64,000 bases of DNA from Klebsormidium nitens (GCA_000708835.1 DF237145.1:69468-133467); one strand, 5' to 3'. Positions 39,230 to 59,300 are shown, numbered from the stretch's first letter. Program-made: numbers and translations. Notes: generated from the sequence alone by a model not told the origin.

Positions 39230-42147
39230 AAAAATGGAAGAGAGGATTCGTCCTGCCCAAATTTGAATCAGGGTCAAAGTCGAAGCTCCTGCCGAAGTGC
39301 CCCGTTGACTATCAACCGACCCGGAAAACGAGCCCGGTTTGCCGCCATGCAGTCCTAAAGAGGGGAGTGAGAACTTTGGGAAGCTTGACAGATTGCCCCT
39401 GACGTCGCTGGTAGTGGTGCTTGTGAGAGCGACAAGTCTAGTGCAGAGGACACGAAGAAGTGAAGCGGGCGACGACTTGATGGCCGCTTGAGGCAAGAAT
39501 GGATCACTGGACCTCTCATTTCCAATTCGGAAGGAGCAAGTACAAGAAGAACTATAACCAGCACTGCCAGCTTGCTGTGATAGAGGGGTAATAGTGTGAG
39601 TGGATAGCATCCCGTTATCACCCAAAAGGCAACGGATATAGTTTTGTTGTCCGTAGAAGTATTTCTCTTCTCCGGTATCCACGTGAATGCTCCCCCCATA
39701 TAAGATGCCCATTCCCCCGCGACGCGCCCATTCTGCTGGTCTTTGCCGCCGCTTGCGCATCTGATCTTGCAGGGGCACGCCAATGAAGTTTCGCCCTGAT
39801 TTGAGCCCTCCCCTTCGGCTCCAAAAGCTCCTCCCCTCAGCACAACATGTCCGGGTGCTGTCAATTCTTCTGCAAAGATTGGTCTTTGTTCCCCCCGGGC
39901 CAACCGGCCTCCATAACGGGGGGCCCAAACCCCTCCCTGTGATGCCCCCCCCGGAGCTGCACTCGCGGCAGACACCGCTTCTTATAGAGGCGGAGCACGC
40001 AACAATGCCGGCCGGCCATAAAGCAAGAACAAGAATCTGGGAGTAGGCCATAGACTATCTGTGGTGATGTAAGTAGCCGGCCCAACCCCCCTCCTCCAAC
40101 TTGGACACATTGGAAGGTGCTCCCCTATGATGCACTCTTGAAGGGCAGGTGTTGCTTGTAGGGTCTTCACCCTCTGCATGGAAAAGCGGGGCGGGACTCA
40201 AATCAGAAGCCAAAAAGATAAAGGCCAAGAACTCCTGATTTCCATTATTACCTGGTGTACCTGAAGTACGTAAGCATAGCAACATAAAGCAACAATTTTC
40301 GAAGAGCTACGCCTGCAGTGAACATCATTTTGCCCAATCTGGAGTGGGCAATGAGCACATTGGAGAAACATTCTGCTCGTCAAGCCAGAGGGGCAAAATT
40401 GGTCCATAACTTGTTGTCAGCTTTGTCCTTTTGGGCTGGTGAAAAGGTGGTATGCTTCTGTGTGAAAACAGGATGTAGTAATCTACTACCTGCACCTCAC
40501 CCCGTCATCCTTTTCTCAAGGGGCGTCTGGGGCTGAGCTGTTTTCCATTTAGCAGCATTTATTTCCAGCTTGACACCGGACATTTTGCAAGGCTGTCTCC
40601 GCTGCTTTCATTGAATCGCCTATTTGAAACACCAGGTTACTATTTCAGCTGCCAGCCGGCATAAGAATTCTTGAGCTCTAGTTTTACATGCAACTGTCAT
40701 CGAACAGGATGCCATTGAGTGCTGATTGCTTTAGACCTACTTACCTGAGGCAGGAGGCCCGGTGATCCCTCCAAAGAAGCAGAACTTCTGTGTCCCAGGT
40801 TATGAACAGATTTGGCTGGGCAGTTTAGTTCAGGGGCTTGGAGTGTTCAGTGCAATGCAAGCGGGAGAACCTTCTGAAGTTGGGAAAGAGGTACGTTTTC
40901 CATCTGCCATTGCCTTTGGTGCTAAGCAAAGTGCAAGCTGGAAAGATCTACAAGTCTGAATCAGGCGCCAACCAATCAAATACACCTACCGTAGTAGCTA
41001 CATCTTTAATCTGCAGCAGCTAAGTATCTGTCCAACACAGCCCTGTAAACCTGCAATGATGAGAGCTTGCCAGTTGATAAGTTGGCCAGTCGCTCGCTCA
41101 GAGCAGACTGCAGCGCGGCGGGCGGCCGCCCGCCGGGCGCCCGCACAGGTACTTCAAATCCTCTCCGTACAATCTGCGGTTGACCGATGCCGTCAAATGA
41201 TGCATGCGGCACAGAACCTACCGGTATGAAGGGCTTCCACCTCAGCATCCCGCAGATTTGACCGATGTTTTCGGACTCACACGTATATAAGGGCAGTGGT
41301 GCTAGCAAAAATGCTGTTGGATAAGTTAAAGCAAATCCGCTGCAAATTGCAATCCACCTAATACAACTGAAATCACAGCAACCGTTTGCTGCTGGAACGG
41401 TATACTCATTCCATATTCCACGACACCTACATAAGCGGTGGGCGGTAGGCTGACCCGGGGTGGGTGTGTGCTGTTGAGTAACCGAGCGCCGTACAGCAGT
41501 TGAACAGAGACAGGATCTTGGCCGTTGGACTTCATCGGACGGTGCTGAAAGCCATGCTCAGAAGGAGTCTTGAAGGATTAAGCAATTAGCAGATTCAGCA
41601 CAGTTACTCGTTCTATGCTCCCGAGTCCCGGTCACTGGACAGTTCCGAAATGACCGGGCGGCCGGAAGGAGCTAAGCAAGGAGTTAAAGGAGTACGGAGA
41701 AAAGTTGTGATTGGCCGCGCGACTCCTTTGCATCTTCTCAAAACCAACTTGGCTCTCTTCTCAAGCCAGCTCTGATGAGAAAGTCATCCAATTCGAGCGC
41801 TTCCTGTTGGCTGAGTTGGTCCTTTTTAGGCAAGCAACTTGCACATCGAAAGTGCTCCCAAAGCGCTTCCTGAAAAATGGTGAATGCAGCAAGCGGATCA
41901 ATCGTTTTCTTTTCTTCTTTGGTGCTCATCATGTAATCAGCTGTAACAACCAGTCTCAGACTATGATCGAGCAGAGAGACGAGGTTTGAGAATGTCGCAA
42001 AAAGGACAAGTTCGAAGCTCCGGTTTGCTGGGGTTTTACTTTACATCATAGCGCCATCGCTTACAGCAATTGGGGTGAAGTTCCGGGGTGCAGTCTTAGC
42101 TGGTGGTCCTTTGGGTGGCCATCACTGCTTAGCGGCATGCACCTCAA

Positions 42148-45100
42148 ATGTCAGGATCTACTAGTCCTGATGCATGGCAGACTTTCTGTCAATTGACTTG
42201 GGGACGCACATCGCGATCAGTCACCATGGCAATTGCACAGTTGGTACCAAGAGGGTCCTTGGCTTGCCGCCAAGACTTGCTGGCGTCACATTACATTGCA
42301 AGCAGAGAAATACACTGGAGATCATCCAACTTCACCAGAAGATCTCAGCCACTGTCGGAAACAGGGCAATGCGCGCCTTTGATTGCAAGAAGAACGCAGC
42401 TTGCAACGTTCTCAGCAAAGGGGGCATCATGGAAGATTGGCACATCAAAAGCCACAGCTCAAACCGAAACCCAAGTCGTCTGCCCAGGTCCAGATACTGA
42501 TGAATTGGGGACATATACACGGGTCTTGGCAAAACGCCAGCTTTACCGGCAGAGAGGACGTCGCTCAAAATGCCCAGCCAAGCGTCGACCAGCGCCCACC
42601 TGGGCTGCGGAAGGTGGCACCGCGCAAGTGACCTCAGCGGGACCCGGTGCTGATGTCATCCGAGGTGAGCATCTAAACCCTCCTGTTAAGGTGACTCTCC
42701 AATCAAAGTGTATTCCTTTGTCAGCTTAGACTGGCCATGCCTTGTTTTTCTTTAGCCTTGGAAAGTAAGGTTCTTTCATCCTAAACTTCTTGAGATGTGC
42801 GGAAAGTTCTCAGGAAGGTGTCAGGCGCATCTCTCGATGAATAGGTTGAAGTAGCGACGTTTTGCGTTCTCGCCGTGCATTCAAGCAGGCTATATTGGCC
42901 ATACTCCTCCCTTTGGTCTTCCCGCCTGGCAGTTCACAGTTCAGCCACCTTCGCATTGCAGGCCGCACCTAGTTCTTTCAACAGTCCATAAGTGATGAAC
43001 AGTCTTAACTGACGCAAAAGCCCATACTGGCCTGGATCCAGTACCAGTATCTGCAACCCAGGGCCACCACCTAGCCCTGCGACTCAGTCAAGCAACTCTG
43101 CTTGTTGCCAAACCTTTCAGCAAGACTCTTTCGAATGCTATTACAGAGGCGGATGCATCTTATTTCTTGATTTGTAGCAAACATTCGCTGCTTAGATGCC
43201 CTGATCGGTTGCTGCAGGTCCATGCACGCACATTGCAAAAGGAACTTTCCTTTCTGAGAACCAACGGAAGGAGGTCGCTGAAGTGTTTGCACATCATGGG
43301 GGCAAGTTGATTCGTTCGGGACAGCTTCTCCAAGCGCTAGCGGCGATCGGAGAACGCTGGTCGAAGCAAGAGGTAAAGGAATGGATCTGTTGCTTGTGAC
43401 GAAGGTTGTCAGAGTTCATGAAGCACCCTCCGACTGGAGAAAATCCTTCTGTTGGCCATCTTCAAAAGTCAGCCGCTCCAACTCCAACCACGCCAACTAT
43501 GGAGATCCTTGCAGGGCAATGAGCGCTCAAGATTCCAAGAACAGGCCTGTGTGGGCACATCTGTTGAAAAGGTTCGAAAGGCAAAGAGTCGGAGGATACC
43601 TGTCAAAGATACAAGACAGCAATGCCGAGTGGGAGGGTTGATTTGCTCACTTCGTTCCGTGAAGCAGCTCGATTTCCAGCCCTTTTGACTAACGGCGGTT
43701 CAGATGTTGGAGAATTGGTGATACTCGACGCAACCAATTTTACCATCAGAAAGTGTGCTTTGAATCGGGTTGTGATCTAGTTCCATTGATTCGACCCTCT
43801 GCCAACGCGTGTCAATAGTTAACTCGATCCGATGCCTGATCGCTCTGTTAAGCCAATGGAAAAGTTTGTTCGTCCGAAGCAAGTCTTTGCTTCAACGTCC
43901 AGGTTTATCTGTCTTGCTTCATCCTTCCCCCGTGCCCTCCATCGAAGGTCTGCCTTTGCTGCGGCTTTCAGACTGTTCTTAAGCTGGAACCGCTACTTGT
44001 CCAAATTCCCATTTCGCTTTCCACACGGGCAAGTTTCTCAGTTACTGATATCAGTCACAGTCCCCTAAAACATACTTCCACGCTCTAAACTGGAAAAACC
44101 TCGTCTTCTCGCTGCCTTATCCAATCCTGCGACCGTTTCGCAGGCCGAAAAAGCGCTGCACGAAGCAGGGGGATCCCTCGACAGCGTCGATGCCCTGGAC
44201 CGTCTGCTACATGACGTCAGCGCCGCGGCGACAGCTGTCCAAATGTGCCTTCCCGGAAACGAGGAGAGTACCAGGGTACTCCGCCCGCTTATGTCCCGGC
44301 GGGTTTATAAGCGGGGGGAAACGCTGGTCAACCAGGGTAAGGCTCGTTCGAAACGCTCTAAGCTTTGTCGCGGAGTTGCTGAGGAGTCCAGCAAACCGGA
44401 GACTCTGGTCCGACTAGAACGGATTTGCGGCAGCAAAAGCACACTCAAAACCTTTTGAAGCCCTGTCTGCACAGCCGGAGAGTTGTTTGCATATGATGCG
44501 AGAGAGCAAGCGACCGACTTGGACCGCTTAAGCAGCCGTCTCGTCACAAAGGCTCGAATATGTTCTGCAAGAAAACCAAGGACCAACTGCGTTTTCAAGA
44601 CAGAAGTCGGAAGCCTCTTCTGTAGCTCCAACTCGATTCACTTCTGAACGCCAATCCGTCGCCCCCTTTCGCAGGCGAGATCGGAACGGAGTTCTTCGCC
44701 CTCGCGGCGGGCTCCGTGTCCGTAATCAAGGACGGCCAACGGATCGGGGGGATGCGCGCCCCGGACTACTTTGGCGAGCTCGCGCTTCACACGCAGGCGC
44801 CCCGGGCCGTCACCATACAAGTAACGCTCAAGCTCTTGCCCAGCTTTGCGTTACATTCGGATTTCTCTTTGGTACTGCCGCTGAGGGCTTCCGGCGAGCT
44901 CGCGCTCCACATCCAGCCAGTCCGGGCCGTCACCATACAGGAAACGCACAAGACCTACGCCAAGCTGGGCATTATGTTCAGAGTTCCCTTTCAGCACTGC
45001 CGCCGAAATTTGCCGAAGAGCTTACGCTCCGCACAGAAACGCTCCATTCATGTAATGTACGGACTGCGCTAAGAGCTTGGCCTTACGCTTACGTTCGTTG

Positions 45101-47290
45101 CGCGAGTTCTTCTTTATTCACAGGCGCCCCGGGCCTTCACGAGACGACTAAAATACGAGGTAGCCAACGGGCCTGGCGTTACATTTAGCTTTTCTTCCCA
45201 ATCCACCAATTGAACATGAACTCGCGCCTAGGAGAAAGACATGCGCCAACAATACTGAAGAGTCAAGTGGACGTTTTGAGTTCGCTTAATGGGGCCCGAA
45301 CGGCGCCTACCCTTGTCATATGCCTGTAATGCTTTTTGGCTTTGATTCCGCGCGCTTCCGGCAGGCCGCCGATGACGTCACAGTGTACGTCTTGCGGGAA
45401 GCCGACTACGCGAAGCACATCAAGGAGCAGAACGCGGACAAGCGCGCGAAGTACGGCGCGTTTCTGGCGTCCGTGCCCCTTTTGAGTGAGCCACGTGTCT
45501 TAGGCCTGGCGATAGCATATGATGTGCTGCAGCTTATGAATGCTCCGAACCGCCACGAGGTCTGTCCTCAGTGAATGCAATTTCGAGAGGAGTATGGAGA
45601 AATTTGTGATACTCTGTTCTTTTCTGGACGAACACACAGTTAAAAATTGACAGCGGCTGTCTCGAAAACGCTCTGCGATTGAAGGCGAAACATAGATTCC
45701 ACATGAAGCAGCGCTATTGAACCTTCAGTCCCGTCTTTAGTAGCCTAACAGGGAACCTTACAATCTGCTCAAGCTGTTACGCGTACGGGAGCACCAATTT
45801 GTAAGACCCTGAATCCCGAGCTTTAGTAGCCCAACCCTAAATCAGACGAATCAGAAGCCACATTTTTCTGGCCTGCCAGAGGACATGGAACCGTACGACC
45901 GACTGAAGCTGTGCGACGCGTTGAAGGAGCAGCAGTTCCAAGACAACGAGCTCATCATTCAGGAAGGAGAGGACGGCGCGCGCATGTACATAGTTACCGA
46001 GGTAAACCCACTCTTAACCAAGGGTTAACCGCCTGCATTAAAGTACGTCGTTAGGAAGGACAGGAAGGGGCGCGTACCGTGGTACGTCTGTACACGACAT
46101 ATTTACGAAAATGAACCCATCTTAACCAAGGGTTAACCGCGTGCTGCTCACAAATCTGCAGGAAACCAGGAACCTTTCCGTTTGCAGACGTGTTAAAAAC
46201 GGAGTCTGAGGACGGTTTTTCACGTCAGCACGTTTGTCTTTGCAGGGGGAGGTCGTCATCGTGAAGTCATTTGACAGCAAGCAGCCGGTGCAAGTGGCGG
46301 TCATCAAACCAGGTGGGTCTCATCGCCGTTTTCTCTGACGTGGCTCCGTCTCTTCCGCGTGCTCTCGTAAATAGCACACACACGTTCAGGGAGCAGCCTT
46401 TCTCCTAAGATCTGCCTTAAGAAAGTAGGGCAGTTTAGAAAAACGTTTGAATCTCTGGGAGTCACCCGACGAGTTTTTCTCGAGGCGCTCGACTGTGCCA
46501 AGCCAGAAAGCTCAACTTCGAAGCCCGCAGTGTTTGCTTAAAAGCCATCTAAAATCCTGATTTACCGCCCACGTTAGGGGAAGTCCGCTGTATCAAGATT
46601 GGAAAAGGGTCATCTTCCATTTTGAGAGCGAGCGGCGAGCTCCGGAGCCGCCAGACCGTCTGCTTTGAAACCCCATTCGGAATTCTGAACCCCTGACTTA
46701 CGACACAATTCGCTTATGGAATCTCGTTGGATAGCGCTTCATCGTGAAGAGCGAACAGCCAGCTGATGAGCTTCTTCTGTAGATGCATTGAAAGAATCGA
46801 AGCTCGCGACCATGATCTCCGCTCAACCCTCTGAAACGACCTTGTTCCCAAATTCCTTGGGCAGGGGGTTTCTTTGGAGAGGCAGTCCATCGTGCGCGGC
46901 GAGCTCCTGAGTTGCTGAACTATCATCGCCCCTTCTGTGAGCTTTTGCCATCGAACCTCGTTTTAGTACGTCTCTTGCGCAGGCGGCTTCTTTGGGGAGC
47001 GTTCCATCGTGAAAAGCGAGCGGCGCGCCGCGAGCGCGCTCTGCCACGGCCCCGTCCAGTGCGTGTCACTGGACCGGCTCTCGTTCCTGCGGATGCTGCA
47101 AAGTCAGGCGACGTCCGGTATCATCCAGAATTCCGTCAAGGGATACCGGACTGCGGCGGACGCTAACCAGGCGAGCGAACGCCCGTCATCTTCCCGTCCG
47201 AAATCTCAAATCTCAAATCTGCTCGAGATCATGTCCTTTCCCACACCAGTTGGGTCTCCGAAAGACAGCGTCTTTAGGAAGCTGCCCTAG
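42148..47290 (+). CDS. Tandem cyclic-nucleotide-binding (PKA-regulatory-subunit-like) protein with an N-terminal transit-peptide-like segment and degenerate EF-hand-like lobe; no kinase domain
   Basis: In-frame exons: 42148/42226-42664 (S/R/A/T-rich leader); 43218-43372 QRKEVAEVFAHHGGKLIRSGQLLQALAAIGERWSKQE; 44143-44335 ...YKRGETLVNQG; 44676-44820 FGELALHTQAPRAVTIQ (CNB-A cassette); 45364-45484; 45880-46000 LKLCDAL...LIIQEGEDGARMYIVTE; 46246-46312; 46984-47170/47290 FFGERSIVKSERRAASA (CNB-B cassette). Confidence 0.8.
44780..45145 (+). repeat. Donor-side echoes of the CNB-A phosphate-binding-cassette exon end
   Basis: ggcgagctcgcgct...ccgggccgtcaccataca occurs at ~44773 and ~44894, with a partial copy at ~45120. 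Confidence 0.75.
46010..47040 (+). repeat. Intronic echoes around CNB-B exons
   Basis: cttaaccaagggttaaccgc (near-palindromic) at ~46011 and ~46121. Degenerate copies of tccatcgtgaaaagcgagcggcg lie at ~46616, 46738 and 46886, before the true copy at ~47002. Confidence 0.65.
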
Positions 47291-47619
47291 ATTAAGCGGG
47301 CGGCGTCGGCTTGAAAACTTTGCGCAATCGTACAGAGTTTCTCTTCTCTGGATGTATCCAACCCCTGTTTGGAACAGCACTTAACACCTTTCTGTGGACA
47401 GGCCAGCTTGAGACTCTCTCTGAACACTCCTTTTTCGAATTCTGAAAACTTAGGCTCGTTCGGGCGGCATCCTTCGCACATCTCGCTCAAAGAAGAGGAC
47501 CCAGTTTGTTTTCTTCTATACGGATCTGGAGGTCCTGCTCTGGCGACTTCCAAAGCAGCGGACACGCTTGTATGTCGCCCTTGTATGTCGCCATTTCTGA
47601 GCGTTCTTGACGCTTGCAG

Positions 47620-50600
47620 GTGTATACTCTGGGCGCTTTGGTCTCGCTCCAGCTCCTGGACGCGGCCGCGTATGAGGACGAGGCATACGCTATGGAGGTC
47701 GTCGAGGGGCACGTGCCGACCGATCTGGACGGCGTCCTGTACAGAAACGTACGTTCGAGATATCCGCACCTCAAATCATCCAGTTTGTCGGAGAGAGCGA
47801 ATTCAAAACTAGGGAAAGATCTGTCTACCTACGGAAAGATCTGTCTACCGATCGCTTCAGCGAAATGATCTCGACACTCTCCGTAGTAGCGCCGGCCGAA
47901 CCCTGCTCAACAACCGCGCCTCTTGATAAGAGCTGCGAATCCGACTTAGGCGTCTGGCTCTCCGAGGTATTGAAGCTTATCTTCTGCGTTCGTTCTCTGT
48001 CACGCTCGACAAGAATAAGATATGGAATATGTCAAGGTAAATTAACATGTTGGTTGAGGGCCTTGTGAGGACCAGACCAGAATTCTTTAACCTTTTCGCT
48101 GCAGGGCCCCGCCTCCTTGAAAGGAGTGGGCGGTTGGCCCCTGAACAACCCGGTAGACGGGGACGGCTGTATCGCCGCGTTTTCCTTCTCCCGAGGTAAA
48201 GTGTACCTGCGGAAACGGGTCGTGCGCACGTCCGCATTCGAGCGGGAGAAGGCGACCGGGAAGTCGAGCTCCAGGGGGGCATTTGGCACTGTGAAAGACG
48301 GGGGGTATTTGGCAAATCTGCTGGACCTGCGTGTGAAGAACGCCGCCAACGTGAGTTATATCAAGTGAAGCGTCGTCACAAGTCTGCGCGGATGAAGGTA
48401 GACCATCTCTTCTTTCTTCTGGACGCGCATGGAAGGTAAACGTTATGATGAAAACAAGTAGGGTGCAAAAATGTTAACTTTCTACCGGGGCGCGCAGGCA
48501 AAGTAGAGGGGTTACTCCGTTCTTGAGCAGTCTACGAAAGCTAGCGTGGACGGAAATGGTAGAATCGACCTAGCAAAAGAAACCTTCGTTCCTTTCGAAA
48601 GCAAAGTCTGCCGGAACTCCACTTCAAACCGTGGAGTTAGAGGAGAACAAACGTAAGCTCTCAAGCTACACAAGTTGACATCTCTAATCTTTCACTTGCA
48701 GACCAACGTAGTGTTCTGGGGCGGTCGGCTGCTCGCGCTCTGGGAGGCGGGGTTACCACACGAGTTAGACCCCGAAACCCTCGAAACCCGGGGAGTAACC
48801 GACCTTAACGGCGCGCTAACCAGTGTGATGTACCCCGTGTTGAGATGGGTGGACCCGCCGTTCCAGCCCGCGTTTGCGGCGCACCCACGGATCGATCCGG
48901 TGAAGAAAAGGTGGGAACTCCGTCCCTGTGTTTGCAAGTTTGTTTTGACGTTCCTCGGTCAAGGAAAAACCCTGCCAAATTTTTCACATTCTTGCCTTGG
49001 GGACCGTTCATGAGCTGGCAGGTGTCTCTTTTGGCTTCGCTTCGCGGATCGTTCGGTGCCCGGATGAGTGCGTTCTCTCCACCTTTTGACTGCGAAAACG
49101 AATCAGTTGATTCGCTACATTTATTATTACATCGGAATCTAGACAAGTTTTTGTATTCTCTAGCCTCCGATTCATCTTTGCTTAAGCTTCCAGCAGACGG
49201 GGATAAGCTGCAAGCGGATCGAGACCTTCAATGAAAATTTCTAACAGCATTTTGAAAAAACATCTCAATCGAATAAAACAGAGAGTCATCAATCTATAAG
49301 CGCTTTAGGTCAACCATATCTATTTTGTGCCTTCTGAACTGTTTACGGCTGTATCGCTCAAATTGTGACGTATCGGCCCCACAGGTTCGTCAGCTTTGGC
49401 GCAACCACCTTCCCTCACGCTTTGCACGACCGAATGCGCGTGACGTGCTATGAGTGGGACGCCGACTGGCGGCTGGTGTTCACGCGCTCCGTGTGGGCCC
49501 CATTCACACTGCTGCACGACTTCTGCATCACGCCCAACTACTACGTTTTCCTGTACACCCCCGGGAAGATGGACCTGCCGAAGTGAGTGGCGCAAGTGTG
49601 GGTTCCGTACAGTGGGTTTGAAAACGCTGGAATACTAGAGGCGTTCAGGCTTTGAGGATCAGAGGGATTTAGCGTCAGGCGTGAGAGGCGTGGAGAGGAA
49701 GAAGCCGAAATGAGGGCTGATTTTTGGGAGAAGAAGTATACGATCCGGATGATCTCCTCTGGTCAGGAAGCGTTTCCGCGGTCAAGGAGTCTTTCCATTC
49801 TCCTCTTTGACCAGTCGCTTTGCTCATACCCCTAGGCTTTCCGAAGACTCGTGAAATCATTCTCAGCGCACTCTTATTCGGCGCCCTCTTCAAACTCGGC
49901 GCCCTTACTGCACGTCAACCTCCTTAGATCTTTCAGTCTTATCACAGATTCATACTCGACCCGAAAGCTGGCATTGCGGGCGCGGTCAAATTTAGCAACA
50001 CGGCGGGGGGGGAGATCATGCTGGTCTCGCGGCATCACCCGACGGCGCCCCCCCAAACGTTCAAAACGGCGCCGCTTTCCGCGCTGCACCACGCGAACGC
50101 GTTCGAGGACGGGCTGGGGAACGTGGTGCTGGACACGCTCAAATACATGGTGAGCTCTCGAGCGTTGACGTCACTTCGGACGAAACAGAGGTCTTGGGTG
50201 AGATTTACCGAGATGACGTCACTTCTGACTTCACACAGGTCGTGGTAAGGTCTCCAGGAATAAATCACTTCTGAAGTCACACAGGTCGTCTTGCGCGGGC
50301 AAAAAGTGTACGAGGCACAAGCTGGAGGGGTAGCTCCTTGCATTCGAACCATGCAGTTTGTTTCGATCAGAGTATCTGACCTTGGTGAGTCGAGGTATGC
50401 CCCGCTTTCCTGACGTCACAAAATGCCGTACGAAACGCTGAAGCCGAACCGTTCAATGGCGCGCGCGGCGGATCTCTATGCATCATTCTTGCAAAGCAGC
50501 CAGCGCCCCCAATTCAAACCTGTTCTCGTACGATCTTTTGTCAACCGATTCGGCTTCTCATGACGTCACGGTGACGTGGGCAGGATTTCCTCCCCTCGCA

Positions 50601-51921
50601 GAGGATCCCGATGCAGTACTTGCGGACTACGTCGGCCGACTCCGCCGCTTATCCCCCTCTTGAGTTTCTGCCGGCGTCGAATGTGGTCCGGTTGCGGCTA
50701 GACCTAAATACCAAGCAGACGACGATCGAAACGCTCGACAAGCGGAACGGCGAGTTTGCCGCGATCCACCCGGAGCGGGTTGGCTACAGTGCTCGGTTCA
50801 TTTACACCGCGTCATGTCAGGTAAGCGCCTCTTCATTTTGCCTAAGGACATCGGATGCAAACCCCCGGTTGACGGTTCGGGTTTTGATTGGCTTGCGGCA
50901 GAATTGCCGGCTGAACGGTTTTCAGGCTTTCAGAGCTTGCAACAAAGCTCTCAAGGAACCCAAAAAAACCTAAGACTGATCTTTAGAGCAGCTTAGTGCG
51001 GGCCTTGAAAGGACAGCAGGCGTGCGAATGTATTAGCTTCTTGCCCATCGTACGGGTGGAAAAGTTGTAATTGGGTTACCGCTCCCAGGCTTTGAACCGT
51101 ACTTTCTATGCAACTTGCTGAAGCTGGTTCAGCTTCTTCCAACCTGCTGCCCACGTCACGGAGACGTCACGGAGACGTCACGGAGCTTTACGGGTCTCTT
51201 GCATCGTTTCCCAAAGTGCTCATTCTAGTTGTCCGCCCACAGGTTCCGGAAGGGGGCGCGCTTTTCGACGCGCTCAGAAAGGTCGACACCAGCGGGAAGA
51301 CCCCCCCGCAAATCTGGGGGGAGTCGCCGACCGTGTATGTGGGGGAGCCCGTCTTCGTGCCACGTGGCGGGCAAAGAGTGGGCGCGCCGTTTGAAGAAGA
51401 TGCGGGCTGGGTGCTCATTCTACTATACGATACTAGATCGTTGACGACGGACCTTGCTGTGTTTGACGCCAAGGTAAGGCAGTCCGTTAATTTGAGCGCC
51501 TTTGATGGAATTATACGCCGATGCTACCAATCTCGTAGTTGCGTTGCGTTTCGCAAGTCAAATGGTTCCCTCCCTTTACCTGACGTCCAACTTGTTTTAT
51601 GTTTTTCAGTGCTTCACTGCTGCGCTTCCAAAGCGGAAATGGAGAAAAAGTTTCTTGGAAAGTACGTCGACCAATTTTGCCGTCTACCTTTGATAACGTA
51701 GTGAGCGAATTCTGATGAGCAGGGCCAGTAACCGGCCTACAATATGATTTCGGCGTTTTGAAGTTTTGTAAAAACGGCAGCTGGCTGATCCGACTTTGCA
51801 GGACATAACGAAAGGACCCGTCGCCCGGTTGAGGTGCCGCCACAACATGGCGTACGGTCTGCACGGCACGTGGGCCGCCCGGGAAGACTTGAACCGGGGT
51901 AGAGGTGCCTTTTCCGGGTGA
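47620..51921 (+). CDS. Carotenoid cleavage dioxygenase (RPE65 family), cyanobacterial ACO-like; no own start exon or transit peptide found
   Basis: Exons 47620-47748 (VEGHVPTDLDGVLYRN), 48105-48351 (GPA...NPVDGDG...KNAAN), 48702-48910 (TNVVFWGGRLLALWEAGLPHELDPETLET...FAAHP), 49385-49581 (LLHDF), ~49949-50148 (LHHANAFE), ~50586-50820, 51243-51473 (GEPVFVP...EDAGW) and 51801-51921 (YGLHG...TGA). All four iron-ligating His residues are present. Confidence 0.9.
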
Positions 51922-53350
51922 CTGGAGTCTCGCCCGGCGGAATGACCCAACCACTCCATCTGTAATGCTACGACCCGCAATGATCAGCTACAATACGTAC
52001 CAGATTGAGCTGGGTTCAGAGCCGACCACAATAGAATCCGGAAACTATCAGGATGAATTTGTTTGATCGACTTCTTCTGCTTGATTAGATGCGCTGAGCT
52101 TCGAAGGGTGTGCTTTGCTTTTCCAATTGTGCTACAGTAGATTCGGCGGCTGCCGAAGCCTACGGCTAGGCTAACCTTAGGTTTGCAGCTTGGAGGCAAA
52201 TAATTAGGAGCTGATAAAGTGTCTTCCTTATAGCGCTTGATGAACCTAGAGCACTTGATTGACTGTGGCACCTCATTGTGACTGCAAGGGGACACGTCGC
52301 GTAACTTAGAGTTGTGTTCCACGTAAAGAGAGCTTACTGCTTGAATTTGCTCGCTAGTGGCGGCTTGAATTCAGCAGCTTAGCGCATTTGCTCTTACGTT
52401 GATAAGACATAGAAGGTTTGGATAAGTTGCTGATCGGGCAGAAAAATTCTCAGTCATGTATAATAAAAACGGTTGACGGACACCGGACGTTCCACTTTGG
52501 TATGGCCGCCGAACACTTGTGATGCTGTTAGTTATGGTTTGCCTGCTTCTTACTTTCGTGCAAATCGCTCCGACGATCACGTGGATCCCCATTTGCAGAA
52601 TATTATGCGATCCGATCCGCACTGGCAAAGGATTAGCTCTAGACAACACCGTAGTGCCATTCAGTGCTGTCAGACACACAAGGCTCTTGGCCTATCCTCA
52701 TGATGATGAGGAAGTGGAACTAGGAACATTCTATCTGCCAGGGTCTGCACATGTCACTTTCATCTAATGACAGGGGATATGGAACCTGTCCTTTCCGGGA
52801 TTGGCTGCGCGTTTCTATGCATATACTCTTACTTATATTGACCTGGACCACATTGATGGGCTACGTAAGGAAGATTGAGTAACTCAAATCGAATTTGCTC
52901 TGAAGATCCTCAATTGTGCACTGCGTGTGATGCAACTGCGCAATGATTGTCATCACATCGGCCTGAAGAAGCTCACGAAGACGTGCCATTGAGCTGAACA
53001 CTTCACGTAGTCATAGTCGTGGCTGCCATACCATGCGTGCCGTGCAGAATGCTCTATATCCTGACTCTCAGCTGCAGTGCATGCAAGATAAGCGCAGTGA
53101 TCAAATTGCTAGCGTCTGCCATCATCTCAGAATGTGCTAACGCGTGATCTTTCTTAGTCTCATACGACCTACTCGGGTGCAATACACCTTCATTTTCTAT
53201 CAGGCTTAGCACATCAAATATCAACGTTCAAGTGAGCTTGCCTGCAACGATTTCCCCTATCCTCAGTGCGTGCGACTACGTGATCAGAACATCTCCAGTT
53301 GGCCTATCCCTATGCTATAAGCAAGATGTGAAGCTTCCCTCGTCTGATAT

Positions 53351-56300
53351 CTAGAAAACAGAGGCAAATGTGCCAGCTGCGGCTAAAACAACCATGGTTA
53401 CAACAGCAGGGAAGGTGTGGCTAGCGCCGGCCTTCTTCGGGGGGGGAGGAGGGGTCAGGACGGAGGGTGGGGGCGGGGGAGAGCGAGGGGTGCTGGGCAT
53501 TGGGGGAGGGCTCTTTCCGAAGGTGCTGTTACCCGAGAACGGGTTGTCGTCTGGGGTGTCAGAGTCGGGGCACGAATCTAGGTTCTCGCAGCTGAATGAG
53601 TTGCCATCGTACCTGCGTCCGGGAAGGGGGCGCTTTTTAACACTCGGATCTAACCACATCGGTTCAGAGCCTAGCATGCATCAAGAAGTCAATTGGACAG
53701 GGGTGCGGAATCTGACAAACAGAGGAAGTCTGCTTGGCTTTTTGCAGTAATTGACGATGGTGCAGGCACTCACCAGAAGAAGAAGTCATCCGCATGCTCA
53801 ACGGCGTGATCGATCAAACAGCTCGAGATGTTGCCTGCAGGAAGGAGGAAATAGTTGCAGAAAAGCTACTTTCGAGGCAGTCTGTATTTAGCACCTTCGG
53901 ATCTTCTCAAGGACACGCTGGAAACAATAGAACATTGAAAACTCTCGCCGATACTCGCCTGCTCATGAACGGGACAACGAGCGTATAATAATTCAAGATT
54001 CTGTCTACCCTTCAGGTCCCCACCTGCCTCGATGGGGTTTTGAAGTAGCTAGAAAGCTGGTCTCGGCTGACAAGAATCCTTTTCAAGATCCAATGAGAAA
54101 ACGAGTTACGTACCAGCAAGCTGATTGTTGGAGATGTCGAGCGCGATCAGGGTGTCCAGGAGATTGCACAGGGCAGCGGGCACAGCCCCAGTGAATTTGT
54201 TGTAACCCAAGCCGCTGAAAGAGAATAGTAGACTGCTTAGTCACAAAAGCGATGGCAAGATGGCGGTGGAGCTTGCGGTCGATTGAAAAATATAAGCTGC
54301 GCACATCGCGTGGCAGCCTGCAAGAAATTCGGCACCAGACGTTGAAAACTTGCAAAAGCCTTGAGAACCAGCCTAGCGCAAAGATAGTGCCTCAAGCCGC
54401 AAACCACTCTTTTGATCAGATTGCAGGCATAACCATCGTTTTTATCCCTGAGTGTTTTACTCCCGAAGAGCATGATGTTTTTAGATGGTGCAAGGAGGTC
54501 GGATTACTGACAGCAGTTGGATGGAAGTCCAGTTGCCAAGCGCGTCGGGCAGCGTCCCCGTCAGCTCGTTGTTCTCGAGGTTGAGGAAGGTCAGTTCGAG
54601 GGTGGTCAGGCACAAAGGGAAGGGACCCGTGAACGCGTTGTCGGAGAAGTCTCTGCACCAAGGTTGATTCAACTCTTTCACTCATCCAAGTTTGGACGTG
54701 CGAGAAGTTGGTTTATGTGTCTCATTCGACGGAATTTGCGCAAGGTACTCCAGTGCTCAATCATTGGGCTGCTGAATGCTTCCGACGGCGACAGGTGGCG
54801 TCCCTGCACCTGACGTATCTTTTCTGTCGGGGCTCATCTCCATGATTTTTCGCTACAAGTTTTGTAAACTCGGGTCTCAGAGATGAGTCCCATGCCTCTG
54901 CTTACGATCCCTCTCTTTCAAGATTCACCGAAGCCATAGGTTCGCGCACGCTGCGCTGAAACGAAAGTGAAGTCCGCAAGGGAAGTCTAAGACTCTGGAG
55001 ACAGTAAGGCAGAAGTTGTCAAGGAAGAGCTTTGTACGAGTGAATGATATACTTACAGCTGCGCCAGCGTCGTTGAGCCGTTGCAATTTGTGGGTAGCGG
55101 CCCCTCTAGCTTGTTGGTGTGCACGGTCCTGCAATGAATGGTTGACATGAGGTCAGGTTTTTACATCGTACATTTTCCTTTCTTGATTCTTAGATGCTGT
55201 GTCTGTTCAGTTACAGTGGCGGACATGCCTTGCACCTTGAAAATCACGTCTTACCCTTTCCCTCGACGACTGATAAGGCCTAGAACTCACATCTTGTGGG
55301 CGTCTTTGGTTCGAACCATCCAACATAGTGTCCCGTTCTGATCATTCCAATCACAAGAGTTCTAGCAGGGTTGTATGTCCTTGTCGTTCTAGGCAGGTAC
55401 TCAAGAATGCTGGTCAACTCACACAGACTTCAGTGCAGGTGCTTGGAAGATTGCCAGGGGAAGAGAGCCGGTGAAACCATTCTCGGAGAGGTATAGGTCC
55501 TCGAGGCTCGTCATGTTCTTGATCCACTCCGGGATAGGGCCGGAGAAGTCGTTCACTTGCACAAACCTGCAGCAGTTGCGGAAGAAGTTTGCTGAGAGCC
55601 CTGGTCTCTTTGATAAGGCAAGCAGATCAAAAGAAGCGACCTCAAGATTGAGATTGGGTTTGCTGTATCCAAGTGTTATCACGGACTTTTACAATCAAAG
55701 ATAAAATGAGGAGAAGCGGAGGCATCCTAATGGTGGTTCAACTTTTTGAAAGCAATAGCGGTAATCCTAATCACCCACGTAAGATTAGATGTGTTAGATT
55801 CAAAAGCTTCAGCCAATTCGTCATACTGCTGCGTCATTGCATTGCGAAGTATTCCGGCCTGATCAGATTAGCCGCCGCTGCTCTGATCTCTTTTCCGAAT
55901 ATTGGATTACAGAACTTTGTTGGGTTCCAGTGCTTAGCATATAAAGATAGGTTGCTTACATCTGTTCGAGTTTCTTGAGCTTGGCGAGGGAGTCGGGCAG
56001 CGCGCCGGTGAATCTGTTGCCGGAGATGTCGAAGAACTCCAGATTGGATAGCTGGCCGAGTTGGGCCGGGAGCACTCCACCGAGCTTGTTGTTGGACAGG
56101 TCCAGATACTGGAGCGTGGTGAGGTTTCCCAATGTTGCGGGAATGCCGATCGGGTTGGTCGTGTTCAGGTTGCCGAACTCGTCGGTCGCTCCCAAGGAGT
56201 TGCCGTTCAGGTCGAGGCGGACGATGTTGGTGAACTTGCTGAAGTCGGGAATGGCGCCGTAAAGCAGGTTGTTCTGCATTTGACTGGGAAAGGAGAGCAA

Positions 56301-59300
56301 ATGTTACTCCCAATTCATCTCTTCGGGATGCTTGCAATGCCACCGTGATTGAAAGGGGTTTCACAGCAAATTGATGCAGGTGACTTGCAGTAGCCAAAGT
56401 CCGCAACGCTAGCGAAACAATGCAGGGTTGCGCGGCCTTACAGTGCAGCAAGTCTCATTCTTGAAGCCGATGAATGGAATCTGAAGGCTCCCTTCAAGCT
56501 GTGGATGTCTGTAGTAGCTACCCATGACTTACTTGGAAATGCAGCGAATCTTTTCCACAAAGCTTTGTTATCCTGGGAAGGAGATCGGCCGTTCGAAGGT
56601 GAGCAGAGGTGAAGTCAAACAGGAGCACATGAGGGCACTTGGAAAAAGCGAACGTTCGTGCGAACTCACAGCTTGTTCATCTTGGGACCCAGGTTCGCGA
56701 TGGACTGGGGGATGGGGCCGCTCAGCTGGTTCAGTTGAAGCTCGCTGCAGAGAGAGAGATTGATGAAGTTCGGTCAGAAGTGGGTTCCGGCCTCGACAGG
56801 CTCGCAGAGGCATTCTCTCACAGAGCTCATGAACTGACTCGTTCAAGGTGCGCTTCACTCAGAAACGAGTGGGTACGTTGAGGAGTCTGCAGTACAAGGA
56901 ATATATACTCGTGTGAAGCAAACCAAGGGCAGCTTCCTCAGTCAGGTTGCTCACAGGACCTCGATCGGCAGAGATTGTGATATACAAGAGTGGCACTTGG
57001 GTCATAAGCGCCATTCGCTCCTCCTCGCTTGATCGCACTGCAGGGTCTGAGGAAATACGAAAACCACCAGGCCAAGTAAGAAGCGTGGATTGCTAGGAAT
57101 GATGACTCACATGTCAGTGAGCGCGGCCATGTTGCCAATTTCGGGGGGAATGGCGCCGGTCAGCCGGTTGGTCTGGACCCAGCTGCGTCAGACAAGGCAG
57201 GCACGGTGATTCAGGAAAACAATAACGTGAAGAGGCGACTCGTTGATTCCACAGACTGCTGTGCCACGAAGCTGATCCAACTGGTGGCAGAACAGGAAAG
57301 GATCAAAGGGAAGTGTCCAGAGACCCAGAAAAGCCTCTTCGATTCTTGATAGAACAATCCACAAATCGTACAAATCGTTCAGAGTCTCGTGTGGAACGGG
57401 TGTTCCGCTACTCACAAGATGGAGAGCTTAGGCATGGTCGTAATCTCGACGGGGATGGATCCACTTAGAGCGTTGTTGTTGAGGTTCAGCGTGTTCAGGT
57501 TCTTCAGATTTGCCAGCTCGACAGGAATGTTTCCCTGAAGCTCGTTGTCCCAGATCTTCCTGCGCTCGCAACGTAGAAAGATCACCGTCAGCCTACGGAA
57601 AATAACGAACCAAAGAGGAACATGCAACACCTGGCTGAAGGTAAACGTGGCTTCAATGAGGAGATAACGTGGCGAGTGCTTCTCGGGAAAAGCATTGCTG
57701 TATTCATAATGCTTTGGGACATGCAGGCGGGAACCTCACAAAGTCTGCAGATTTGTTAGGCTCCCGAGCTGAGGCGGGATGTTGCCACTCCAGTCGTTGG
57801 TCGAAAGGTCCCTGAATATAAAGAGAGAAGGGATTCTTGTCAGCATCTTCAAAAGGTAGATTCATTGCACCTTAAACCCTTCCCAGAAATTATACGCTTT
57901 CACACAGGCATCACCAATTGGCAAGCTGAAATGAAAGAGCTCCGAAGAATCCAATGCAGGATCATTTGCATTTTTGGAGGATTAGTAGTTTTGCTGAGAA
58001 ACTTACAGCTGCACCAGGCTAGACTTCAAAGCAGCAAGCTTGGGATTGATGCACCAGGTCTCCCCTCCATGGCCGGGGTACGCGATGAGGTCAGCCGACG
58101 TGGGAGTCGCACAGGTCGTCAAGCCGTTCCCATTCAGGTCACTGTCTCCCAGCTTGTTGTTGTCCAACAACCTGCAACCAAGCAGTAGACTCGCTTTTAG
58201 GAGCGAAACAAGCACTTACTTTTATCATCCCTTTACATACGTATTTTTCCAAACGTTCTAGTACATATCCTGCAAGCGGAAGAAGACGATTGGAATGCGT
58301 AAAGAGCAGAGGCTGGGACTTACAGACTCTGAAGCTTCGGGATCTGCGTGATGGAGTCTGGCACTCCTCCGTAGAGCTTGCAGAAGGACATGGACCTGCA
58401 ACGCCGTTCGAGCCGTCAGCTATGGAAGTATGTGTTTGCCAGTGTCTTGATCCCCTTTTTGCATTTTCCAATGCAAAAGCCCAACTGATAAGATGTCAAT
58501 AAGACGTATCAAAGACGATGGATACGTGTCTAGCCTTGCTGATATCCAAGAAGCTTCAACCTTAAAACAGACAACGGGAATTTGAGCCCACTCACAAGTC
58601 GGTCAGAGCGGTGAAAGTGCCGTCCAACCAGGAAGGTATCGTTGAGGCGAGAGGGTTGTTGTTCAAGGTCCTGCAGATGGTTCACGACGGTCATTGATTA
58701 GGCAGTACAACTCCATGTCCTGCATTCTGTTCTCAAATCGATCCGCTTTGAAGTTTCGTGCCACTTTGCACGTCAGAAAGGAGTATTTATCCCATGCATG
58801 CAAGGAAAATGAGAAGCTCGAAGCCGTCAGCGGAGACTAGAATCAAGAACGGGGGGGCTTACAGGACTTTGAGCTTCTTCAGAGCCTTCAGCTCTTGAGC
58901 GACGCCACTGAACTGGTTGTTGGCCACGTTAAGCTCCGTCAGAGTGGCTGACAAGGAAGCCAAAGACTTCGGCACAGTGCCGCTGAAAGCATTGATGTCC
59001 AAAGCCCTGCAAAGAAGACCAACGACATGTAAACAGCCGGGCAGCTAAGTGAAAGAAAACAGGCTTCTATGTGGTGCAGTCCTGCAAGAAACTCTGAAGC
59101 TAAGATACTCTGTTATGCTGTTGATGTCGTTTCACACCCATCCTCAAACGAAAGGCCATATTGTCGATCACAGGACGTCCTCAGGAATGATATCGCTACC
59201 CATGCTAAGACTGTGAAGAAAAAAAGACATTGCTAAGTCCGAAGGCTTACAGGCTCTGCAGCTTGACGAGGCCGCTGAAGTCGTAGCTGGTCAGGTCTCC

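What the first reader, a model, noticed from the sequence alone, without database searches (positions are those of the whole stretch)
47160..47750. Possible in-frame fusion of the tandem cNMP-binding protein to a carotenoid oxygenase through a GC-AG intron
Seen: the CCD's first recognisable exon (acceptor ttgcag|GTG at 47620) has no in-frame ATG or targeting peptide upstream, and the CNB gene's nominal stop lies only ~330 bp earlier. At 47170 the CNB frame reads AAC CAG|GCGAGC, a GC version of the GTGAGC donor common in this window. Splicing 47171-47619 joins both genes in phase 0 with no stop. The sequence after 47170 is low-complexity (aaatctcaaatctcaaatct) and looks intronic. The CNB gene begins with an S/R/A/T-rich, acid-poor leader resembling a plastid transit peptide, which a CCD would need. 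Inference: a plastid enzyme TP-EF-like-CNB-CNB-CCD whose apocarotenoid output is gated by cAMP. I know of no described CCD with such a regulatory module.
Basis: inference. Interest (0 to 1): 0.85.

Follow-up and report, generated by a model that had tools for sequence, protein, structure and literature searches.

The report
Cyclic-nucleotide sensor fused to carotenoid-cleaving enzyme
In this alga (Klebsormidium, according to earlier scan notes) a double cyclic-AMP/GMP-binding module and a complete carotenoid-cutting enzyme are spliced into one mRNA and one 1020-residue protein. The join is kept in two related algae, which suggests that a second messenger directly controls production of a carotenoid-derived molecule such as retinal, though that control is untested.

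Summary
RNA-derived contigs from four studies join 47170 to 47620 through a GC..AG intron. The spliced form has the same depth as the flanking exons (65-188). The unspliced form was seen in one run only, at depth 4.3.

I rebuilt a 16-exon, 1020-aa open reading frame (42148-51921, + strand). It reads: S/T-rich, acid-poor leader; helical region; two PKA-R/PKG-like cNMP-binding domains; a 25-residue linker; then a complete ACO-type carotenoid cleavage oxygenase. All four iron-binding His and three second-shell Glu are present.

Two related genomes keep the arrangement. A metagenome contig (L001) has the same 16 exons and an open 1008-aa frame. A Logan contig (L002) has the exon 8 tail to exon 16. 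Both use a normal GT donor, so the GC here is a derived T-to-C change. At dS about 1, dN/dS is about 0.1 for both sensor domains, the linker and the enzyme.

No other fused relative turned up in the protein libraries. No paper in the held library describes the fusion.

Plastid targeting and cNMP gating remain inference, and Pfam does not support the "EF-like" label. The scan had already noted this fusion (s1-299315, s1-277636).

The parts
42148..42664 (+). Exon 1 (inferred): start codon and a 172-residue S/T/A/R-rich, acid-poor leader, possibly an organelle-targeting peptide
   Evidence: First ATG after an in-frame stop 5 codons upstream. Donor gtgagc. L001 has an equivalent first exon (ATG to ...ADVITG|gt, same phase) with the same composition. 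Not covered by the RNA lay.
43218..43372 (+).
   Evidence: Same length and AG/GT sites in L001. No Pfam family.
44144..44336 (+). Exon 3 (inferred): end of the helical region and start of CNB-A
   Evidence: Same length and splice sites in L001. tblastn identity 65%.
44675..44820 (+). Exon 4: CNB-A beta core with the phosphate-binding cassette FGELALHTQAPRAVT (Glu323, Arg332)
   Evidence: Pfam cNMP_binding. PDB phmmer hits PKG and PKA-R at E 4.8e-11. The loose end of RNA contigs before 45365 matches 44792-44820.
45365..45485 (+). Exon 5: CNB-A C-terminal helices
   Evidence: RNA joint 45485^45880.
45880..46001 (+). Exon 6: start of CNB-B
   Evidence: RNA joints 45485^45880 and 46001^46246. Pfam cNMP_binding N-terminal part.
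46246..46312 (+). Exon 7: CNB-B beta strands
   Evidence: RNA joints on both sides.
46983..47170 (+). Exon 8: CNB-B phosphate-binding cassette FGERSIVKSERRAAS (Glu446, Arg455), the C-terminal helices, and the first part of the linker. It ends ...ADANQ.
   Evidence: Pfam cNMP_binding. Aligns to PKA RI-alpha CNB-B residues 321-372 of 379. RNA contigs carry it joined to exon 9.
47171..47619 (+). Intron 8, the fusion intron: GC donor (cag|GCGAGC), AG acceptor (ttgcag|GTG), 449 nt. It holds the read-through stop TAG (47288-47290) and an in-frame TGA (47608-47610).
   Evidence: Joint seen in 4 of 4 runs at exon depth. An unspliced contig (47173-47633) appears only in X1, at depth 4.3. DNA similarity to L001 ends exactly at 47170 and resumes exactly at 47620. 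It is the only GC donor among the 15 introns.
47620..47748 (+). Exon 9: conserved linker (VYTLGALVSLQLLDAAA...) and the N-terminal start of the CCD domain (...GHVPTDLDGVLYRN). The in-frame ATG at 47692 is Met528.
   Evidence: RNA joints on both sides. Pfam RPE65 profile positions 6-32. 84-86% identical in L001 and L002. Linker dN/dS 0.09.
48105..48350 (+). Exon 10: CCD
   Evidence: RPE65 E 1.4e-10. Best PDB match is Synechocystis ACO residues 57-135. RNA joints on both sides.
48702..48910 (+). Exon 11: CCD, with Glu643 and iron ligand His689
   Evidence: RPE65. RNA joints. Conserved columns.
49385..49582 (+). Exon 12: CCD, with iron ligand His742
   Evidence: RPE65. RNA joints..
49948..50149 (+). 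Exon 13: CCD, with iron ligand His811
   Evidence: RNA joint 49582^49948. The loose end behind 50149 matches 50602-50630..
50602..50820 (+). Exon 14: CCD, with Glu882
   Evidence: Its start is fixed by the RNA loose end. Its end is inferred and conserved in L001 and L002.
51243..51473 (+). Exon 15 (inferred): CCD, with Glu939
   Evidence: RPE65 E 4.7e-12. Best PDB match is ACO residues 396-462. Same length and splice sites in L001 and L002.
51802..51921 (+). Exon 16 (inferred): CCD C-terminus with iron ligand His1002 and the stop codon TGA at 51919-51921
   Evidence: Frame closes at TGA. Conserved in L001 and L002. His column conserved.

Best explanation
Shown: 42148-51921 (+ strand) is one 16-exon gene. 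Intron 8 (47171-47619) is a genuine, efficiently spliced GC-AG intron. It joins the last exon of a tandem cyclic-nucleotide-binding module in frame to the first exon of a carotenoid cleavage oxygenase. The product is a 1020-aa protein with these segments:
- leader, residues 1 to about 175
- helical region, about 180-262
- CNB-A, about 263-375
- CNB-B, about 376-496
- linker, 497-525
- CCD of the cyanobacterial ACO type, 526-1020

Both CNB domains keep the cassette Glu and Arg that hold the ribose-phosphate. The CCD keeps its four iron-binding His and three second-shell Glu. Two related genomes have the same fusion, and it is under purifying selection throughout, the linker included.

Inferred: the architecture resembles PKG or EPAC, with a tandem CNB placed N-terminal to a catalytic domain in the same chain. 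The most likely mechanism is therefore cis regulation. Binding of cAMP (or cGMP) moves the C-terminal helix of CNB-B, which lies only about 25 conserved residues from the CCD. That movement would relieve, or impose, a block on the enzyme's substrate tunnel or its membrane-binding face. Production of an apocarotenoid would then follow the second messenger. Retinal is the obvious candidate product, because the nearest characterised enzyme makes it and this alga has retinal-using rhodopsins.

My confidence is about 0.95 for one gene and one fused ORF, and about 0.5 for cNMP control of catalysis. The figure below applies to the whole statement.
For: RNA evidence: joint 47170^47620 with GC..AG ends in 4 of 4 runs from 4 studies, at depth 65-188. 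The unspliced form appears only in X1 at depth 4.3, like other introns (6-9). Single contigs link exons 7, 8, 9 and 10.

Open reading frame: 3063 nt with no stop.

Comparative evidence:
- L001 has all 16 exons. Exons 2-15 have identical lengths and AG/GT sites, the exon 8 donor is GT, and the ORF is an open 1008 aa.
- L002 has the exon 8 tail ...YRTAADANQ|gtgagg, then exons 9-16 in frame.
- DNA similarity stops at 47170 and resumes at 47620.
- Selection at dS 1.06: dN/dS is 0.10 for CNB-A, 0.11 for CNB-B, 0.09 for the linker (90% aa identity, the best-kept segment) and 0.11 for the CCD.

Domain identity:
- Pfam cNMP_binding and RPE65 on the exons.
- Exon 8 aligns to PKA RI-alpha CNB-B residues 321-372, with the FGE...RAA cassette aligned.
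- Exon 4 aligns to PKG and PKA-R cassettes.
- The CCD exons match Synechocystis ACO best. The CCD is 37-39% identical over about 490 aa to cyanobacterial proteins named 8'-apo-beta-carotenal 15,15'-oxygenase.
- His689, 742, 811 and 1002 and Glu643, 882 and 939 are conserved here and in L001.

Context: K. nitens has retinal-binding channelrhodopsins (PMC7902849 and PMC12177036). That this window is K. nitens rests on earlier scan notes only.
Against: - No experiment or structure here shows nucleotide binding, nucleotide preference or any coupling to catalysis.
- Logan contigs cannot show transcript starts or ends. A minor CCD-only mRNA starting inside exon 9 and translated from Met528 (conserved in L001 and L002) is therefore not excluded.
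- The CCD departs from otherwise 93-98% conserved residues at several positions: N561 for His, D768 for Gly, S808 for Phe, A884 for Pro, A998 for Pro. Its substrate, or even its activity, may differ from ACO.
- If the leader really sends the protein into the plastid, a plastid cNMP pool is required, and that is not established.
- The CNB-B cassette is atypical (GERSI in place of GE[LI]AL, and no Pro before the Arg).
Confidence: 0.6

Rival explanations
1. The fusion protein is real, but the CNB tandem does not gate catalysis. It could serve for dimerisation, anchoring or localisation, as PKA-R subunits do through partner proteins. It could bind another ligand. Or the CCD part could act as a carotenoid or apocarotenoid binding or sensing domain and not as an enzyme.
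For: Several positions that are nearly invariant in ACO-type enzymes are changed in the CCD. The CNB-B cassette is atypical. The helical region before CNB-A evolves faster (dN/dS 0.44) and has no recognisable family. Nothing here tests coupling.
Against: All metal ligands and second-shell Glu are kept, and both cassette Glu/Arg pairs are kept in both species. The short linker between the CNB-B C-helix and the CCD is the most conserved segment of the protein. That is what one expects of a mechanical coupling and not of a passive tether.
Confidence: 0.27
2. The locus yields two products. Besides the fused mRNA, a CCD-only protein is made from an internal promoter or internal initiation at Met528 (ATG 47692), and possibly a CNB-only protein from intron-8 retention (stop at 47288). 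The fusion would then be only one isoform.
For: The in-frame ATG at 47692 is conserved as Met in L001 and L002. A retained-intron contig exists in X1. Contigs cannot reveal transcript starts.
Against: The retained form has about 2% of the spliced depth, no more than other introns of the gene. The 24 codons before Met528 are 90% conserved with dN/dS 0.09, so they are translated. They have no ATG and are closed upstream by TGA 47608-47610. The read-through tail after 47170 is not conserved, and in L001 it would stop after 5 codons.
Confidence: 0.08
3. Two separate neighbouring genes, with the junction an occasional read-through ('conjoined gene') or assembly artefact.
For: The genes are only 330 bp apart, GC donors are rare, and de Bruijn contigs can chain neighbouring transcripts.
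Against: The joint is a precise GC..AG excision in 4 independent studies, at the same depth as the flanking exons. The exon 9 frame is closed upstream. The junction, its phase and the exon lengths are conserved in two other genomes, which use a canonical GT donor.
Confidence: 0.03

Closest known systems
Synechocystis apocarotenoid-15,15'-oxygenase (ACO/Diox1, PDB 2BIW) and cyanobacterial or glaucophyte ACO-like carotenoid oxygenases
   Same: It is the best solved-structure match for the CCD exons. The CCD is 37-39% identical over about 490 residues to cyanobacterial homologues. The four His and three Glu of the iron centre are conserved. The CCD covers essentially the whole single-domain enzyme.
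   Different: ACO and all 268 relatives I fetched are stand-alone enzymes, or carry only a leader. None shows similarity to residues 1-503 of this protein. Several residues that are nearly invariant in those enzymes are changed here. Substrate and product are unknown.
PKA regulatory subunit RI-alpha (tandem CNB-A/CNB-B)
   Same: It has two consecutive CNB domains. Exon 8 aligns to the CNB-B cassette and C-terminal helices (residues 321-372 of 379), with the FGE...RAA motif aligned. Ala follows the cassette Arg, as in cAMP-selective domains (my knowledge of PKA versus PKG cassettes, a weak indicator).
   Different: Pfam detects no RIIa dimerisation/docking domain, and no kinase partner is implied. 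Here the CNB-B C-helix runs on into an enzyme, whereas in RI-alpha the protein ends there.
cGMP-dependent protein kinase (PKG) and EPAC: CNB domains in cis with a catalytic domain
   Same: The domain order is the same: CNB module N-terminal to the catalytic domain in one chain. Plasmodium PKG gives the best PDB hit for the CNB-A core. The proposed autoinhibition-relief logic is borrowed from these proteins (established knowledge of PKG and EPAC).
   Different: The output domain is a non-haem-iron carotenoid oxygenase, not a kinase or a GEF. No pseudosubstrate or known inhibitory interface can be pointed to.
GC-AG introns (minor class of U2-type introns)
   Same: The donor is GC in a strong exon context (CAG|GCGAGC, where this gene commonly has GTGAGC). 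The acceptor is AG. The intron is efficiently spliced.
   Different: Nothing unusual. The orthologous donors in L001 and L002 are GT, so this is a recent T-to-C change without visible effect on splicing.

Membership tests
Carotenoid cleavage oxygenase / RPE65 family (PF03055) | Sequence match to the family profile along the whole domain | tested here: met
   Exons 9-15 hit PF03055 at profile positions 6-32, 40-108, 108-156, 174-224 and 378-444. BLASTP of residues 504-1020 against cyanobacterial members gives E about 1e-107 over about 490 aa.
Carotenoid cleavage oxygenase / RPE65 family (PF03055) | Four iron-coordinating histidines | tested here: met
   His689, His742, His811 and His1002 fall in columns that are 95-98% His in 165 aligned sequences. 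The same holds in L001.
Carotenoid cleavage oxygenase / RPE65 family (PF03055) | Three second-shell glutamates | tested here: met
   Glu643, Glu882 and Glu939 are conserved here and in L001. Those columns are 90-96% Glu.
Carotenoid cleavage oxygenase / RPE65 family (PF03055) | Oxidative cleavage of a carotenoid or apocarotenoid double bond | not testable with these tools
   Needs an enzyme assay.
ACO subfamily (apocarotenoid-15,15'-oxygenase, retinal-forming) | Closest relatives are ACO-type enzymes, and specificity for apocarotenals with cleavage at 15,15' | tested here: inconclusive
   ACO is the best PDB hit (57 bits against 33 or less for other CCDs). The named cyanobacterial homologues are the nearest full-length relatives. 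But identity is only 37-39% and several conserved residues differ. Specificity was not tested.
Cyclic nucleotide-binding domain (PF00027) | Profile match to the beta-barrel and cassette, twice | tested here: met
   The domains are split by introns, so each exon scores just under the 27.5-bit Pfam cut-off (25.4, 24.6, 23.5, 15.9 bits). Together the exons cover profile positions 2-25 and 50-88 (CNB-B) and 13-66 (CNB-A). PDB phmmer gives E 4.8e-11 and 2.3e-07 to PKG and PKA-R CNB domains.
Cyclic nucleotide-binding domain (PF00027) | Phosphate-binding cassette with the invariant Gly-Glu and Arg | tested here: met
   CNB-A has G322-E323...R332 and CNB-B has G445-E446...R455. Both align to the cassettes of PKA and PKG and are kept in L001 (translation).
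Cyclic nucleotide-binding domain (PF00027) | Actual binding of cAMP or cGMP | not testable with these tools
   Needs a binding assay.
PKA regulatory subunit | N-terminal RIIa dimerisation/docking domain and a kinase-inhibitor site before CNB-A | tested here: not met
   No Pfam family was found in exons 1-3 at E up to 5, other than two chance-level hits. I did not look for an inhibitor site. The protein is therefore PKA-R-like in its CNB tandem only.
Chloroplast transit peptide-bearing protein | N-terminal presequence recognised by the plastid import machinery | tested here: inconclusive
   The composition fits in both species (S+T 0.20-0.25, D+E 0.01-0.05 in the first 100 residues). No predictor or localisation data were available, and the start codon has no RNA support here.
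GC-AG intron | GC donor and AG acceptor, removed from mature RNA | tested here: met

The most novel reading that the evidence does not exclude
This would be the first carotenoid cleavage oxygenase with a built-in second-messenger switch. cAMP or cGMP binding to the tandem CNB module would turn on (or off) cleavage of a carotenoid or apocarotenoid, possibly making retinal for the alga's rhodopsins or a signalling apocarotenoid. Cyclic-nucleotide signalling would then directly set chromophore or hormone-like metabolite supply. The module could also be reused as a cNMP-controlled retinal source.
Probability: 0.45. Interest if true: 0.8.

Novelty: new variant of a known kind. Interest (0 to 1): 0.64.

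Why it matters
As far as I know, and as far as the held literature shows, carotenoid cleavage oxygenases are single-domain enzymes regulated mainly through expression and substrate access. They make retinal, abscisic-acid and strigolactone precursors and many signalling apocarotenoids.

A CCD wired in cis to a PKA/PKG-type cyclic-nucleotide sensor would be a new regulatory principle for this enzyme family. It would also be a new output for cyclic-nucleotide signalling in the green lineage, where cNMP targets are still poorly defined.

The case is directly testable with a simple assay: recombinant protein, apocarotenal substrate, with and without cAMP or cGMP.

The interest is limited in two ways. 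The fusion appears confined to a narrow group of Klebsormidium-like algae, and its function is so far only inferred.

Tried and rejected
- A scan of metagenome contigs with exon 10 found nothing, so I did not spend a second scan.
- I could not retrieve the public annotation's own protein model for this locus. The spliced protein has no reference, and length limits block exon-sized queries from finding a 1020-aa entry.
- A mixed alignment of a Cyanophora-type CCD (P0004) with the window's exons (A2) was meant as a carrier query. MAFFT scattered the fragments, so I abandoned it.
- For the same reason (no reference for a spliced sequence) I ran no structure prediction, fold search or atlas search. 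No targeting predictor is available.
- tblastx of the window's flanks (30000-42147 and 51922-60000) against L001 was blank. The adjacency to the upstream adenylyl cyclase-phosphodiesterase gene is therefore not visibly conserved, and I do not use it as functional evidence.
- The representative search with exon 10 and the two fragment searches found only the two relatives. A search with P0004 listed only plain PF03055 proteins among its best 120. Fused proteins with a more distant CCD, or annotated only as long eukaryotic models, could have been missed.
- I rejected 'separate genes plus read-through' and 'assembly artefact'; the reasons are under the rival explanations.
- I rejected the 'EF-hand' label.

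Full report
**1. Observation**

- The cNMP-binding (CNB) frame reads ...GCT AAC CAG|GCGAGC at 47170/47171.
- If read through, it runs to TAG at 47288-47290.
- The acceptor ttgcag|GTG sits at 47619/47620.
- An AAATCTC repeat lies at 47201-47222.
- Removing 47171-47619 keeps the frame open in phase 0.

One detail is inexact. An in-frame ATG does exist in the first CCD exon, at 47692 (Met528). It lies 24 codons after the acceptor. The frame is closed just upstream of the acceptor by TGA 47608-47610.

**2. RNA evidence**

The look-up of sequencing runs listed 20 runs from 8 studies that hold the stretch. I laid four runs from four studies on 45000-50500. Their contigs skip GT..AG introns, so they derive from RNA.
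- All four runs contain a contig with the joint 47167->47617 ('skips 449', 4 ambiguous letters). That is 47170^47620 with GC..AG ends (context).
- The depth of that contig is 188, 65, 92 and 80 in the four runs.
- The same contig also carries 46312^46983, 47748^48105 and exon 10. Exon 8 (CNB) and exons 9-10 (CCD) are therefore physically joined.
- The unspliced sequence 47173-47633 appears only in run X1, at depth 4.3. That is comparable to the retained pieces of other introns (6.7-8.7).
- Caveat: contigs cannot show transcript starts or ends.

**3. Gene model**

I used the observed joints, the two loose ends (44820->45365 and 50149->50602) and splice signals. These give 16 exons between 42148 and 51921 and a 3063-nt ORF of 1020 codons. 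Fourteen introns are GT-AG; only intron 8 is GC-AG. Exons 1-4 and 15-16 are inferred, not seen in RNA.

| Segment | Residues | Evidence |
|---|---|---|
| Leader | 1 to ~175 | composition, |
| Helical region, no Pfam family | ~180-262 | |
| CNB-A, cassette FGELALHTQAPRAVT | ~263-375 | |
| CNB-B, cassette FGERSIVKSERRAAS | ~376-496 | |
| Linker | 497-525 | |
| CCD | 526-1020 | |

- Exon 8 aligns to PKA RI-alpha CNB-B residues 321-372 of 379. That is almost the end of that protein.
- Exon 10 aligns to Synechocystis ACO from residue 57. Exon 9 therefore corresponds to the N-terminal ~50 residues of a stand-alone ACO.
- The exon 8/9 boundary is thus the domain junction.

**4. State of the two modules**

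In an alignment of 165 CCD sequences, the window protein and L001 keep the four iron ligands (His689, 742, 811, 1002) and the three second-shell Glu (643, 882, 939).

Several positions that are 93-98% conserved elsewhere are changed: N561, D768, S791, S808, A884, C993 and A998. It is a divergent ACO-type enzyme.

Over about 490 residues it is 37-39% identical to cyanobacterial proteins named 8'-apo-beta-carotenal 15,15'-oxygenase.

Both CNB cassettes keep the Gly-Glu and the Arg that bind the nucleotide.

**5. Related genomes**

The exon 10 search of 1.84 billion representatives gave one close fragment, P0006 (86% identity). Everything else was 53% identical or less, and stand-alone. The five hits with long N-terminal extensions that I scanned (P0004, P0016, P0100, P0133, P0082) carry RPE65 only.

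*L001.* P0006 led to a 99-kb JGI metagenome contig.
- tblastn finds the whole protein there, collinear.
- Exon-by-exon alignment gives identical lengths for exons 2-15 and AG/GT at every homologous boundary.
- The rebuilt ORF is 1008 aa with no stop.
- The exon 8 donor is cag|gttggt.
- Nucleotide similarity ends exactly at 47170 and resumes exactly at 47620. The read-through frame in L001 would stop after 5 codons.

*Selection between the window and L001.* At dS 1.06:

| Segment | dN/dS |
|---|---|
| CNB-A | 0.10 |
| CNB-B | 0.11 |
| Linker (90% aa identity) | 0.09 |
| CCD | 0.11 |
| Helical region | 0.44 |

*L002.* A second fragment, P0269, led to a Logan genomic contig. It begins in the exon 8 tail (...YRTAADANQ|gtgagg), has a ~665-nt intron, and then has exons 9-16 in frame to the stop.

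The fusion is therefore shared by three diverged genomes. The GC donor is a derived change in the window's lineage.

*Rarity.* Searches with exon 8 and exon 10 in 5.8 billion clusters returned only these relatives. None of the 268 CCD proteins I fetched resembles residues 1-503. As far as these tools see, the fusion is confined to a narrow group.

**6. Leader**

Exon 1 has an L001 counterpart of similar length that ends in the same motif and phase (ADVIRG| against ADVITG|). Both are rich in Ser and Thr and poor in acidic residues. D+E is 0.01-0.05 in the first 100 residues, against 0.11-0.12 in the rest. This fits an organellar presequence but proves nothing. I had no predictor.

**7. Mechanism (inference)**

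The domain order copies PKG and EPAC, with a CNB module in cis and upstream of a catalytic domain. The CNB-B C-terminal helix is the element that moves on nucleotide binding in those proteins (established knowledge). Here it is tied to the CCD by a short linker that is the most conserved part of the protein.

I therefore favour cNMP-dependent relief, or imposition, of autoinhibition of the CCD. Ala after the cassette Arg in both domains hints at cAMP more than cGMP, but that is weak.

Retinal is a plausible product. The nearest characterised enzyme makes it, and K. nitens has retinal-binding channelrhodopsins (PMC7902849, PMC12177036). The organism name itself comes only from earlier AI notes; I did not verify it.

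**8. Neighbourhood**

It is tempting to link the two genes. However, L001 shows no similarity to the window's flanks, so I treat the adjacency as unproven.

**9. Literature**

- Three term sets found no paper: 'carotenoid cleavage' + 'cyclic nucleotide-binding domain' + 'fusion'; 'carotenoid oxygenase' + 'cNMP'; and Klebsormidium + cAMP + 'cyclic nucleotide-binding' gave only an unrelated transporter review.
- Papers on streptophyte CCDs that include K. nitens do not mention cyclic nucleotides.
- The library lacks most subscription journals.
- The scan itself had already noted and followed up this fusion (s1-299315, s1-277636). Those are not independent evidence.

**10. Verdict**

The fusion is real, expressed as the dominant form, conserved and under selection. 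The functional reading (plastid location, cAMP gating, product) is reasonable but untested. It is a new domain architecture built from two well-known families, so I class it as a new variant of a known kind.

Noticed in passing
window 44893-44940 (intron 4) and 46860-46915 (intron 7); L001:7720-7794; L002: about 160-195: Introns hold decayed copies of the neighbouring exon edge together with its splice site. Intron 4 has a copy of the exon 4 3' end (GELALHIQPVRAVTIQ). Intron 7 has a copy of the exon 8 acceptor and 5' end. The relatives have equivalents. This matches the 'exon-edge copy arrays' noted elsewhere in this genome (s1-267523).
   Followed up: partly
window 48351-48397: There is a minor alternative donor 47 nt downstream of the exon 10 donor (joint 48397^48702). 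It appears in three of four runs at about 12-27% of the main junction depth and shifts the frame by +2, so it is presumably an unproductive isoform.
   Followed up: no
window 47567-47592, 47201-47222, 47813-47849, 51155-51185: Short tandem duplications lie inside introns 8, 9 and 14: CTTGTATGTCGCC x2, AAATCTC x3, GGAAAGATCTGTCTACC x2 and GTCACGGAGAC repeats.
   Followed up: no
window 44212, 45373, 50166, 50214, 50411, 50561: The palindrome TGACGTCA occurs six times within this one gene, partly in exons. This echoes another scan note on its excess in this genome (s1-290874).
   Followed up: no
window 21932-39229 relative to 42148: A receptor adenylyl cyclase-phosphodiesterase gene (earlier scan note) lies about 3 kb upstream of the CNB-CCD gene. 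So a maker and breaker of cAMP sits beside a putative cAMP-controlled enzyme. L001 shows no similarity to these flanks, so conservation of the adjacency is not supported.
   Followed up: partly
L001:18073-19599: A reverse-transcriptase (RVT_1, weak) ORF of 508 aa lies downstream of the orthologous gene in the metagenome contig. It is probably a retroelement.
   Followed up: no
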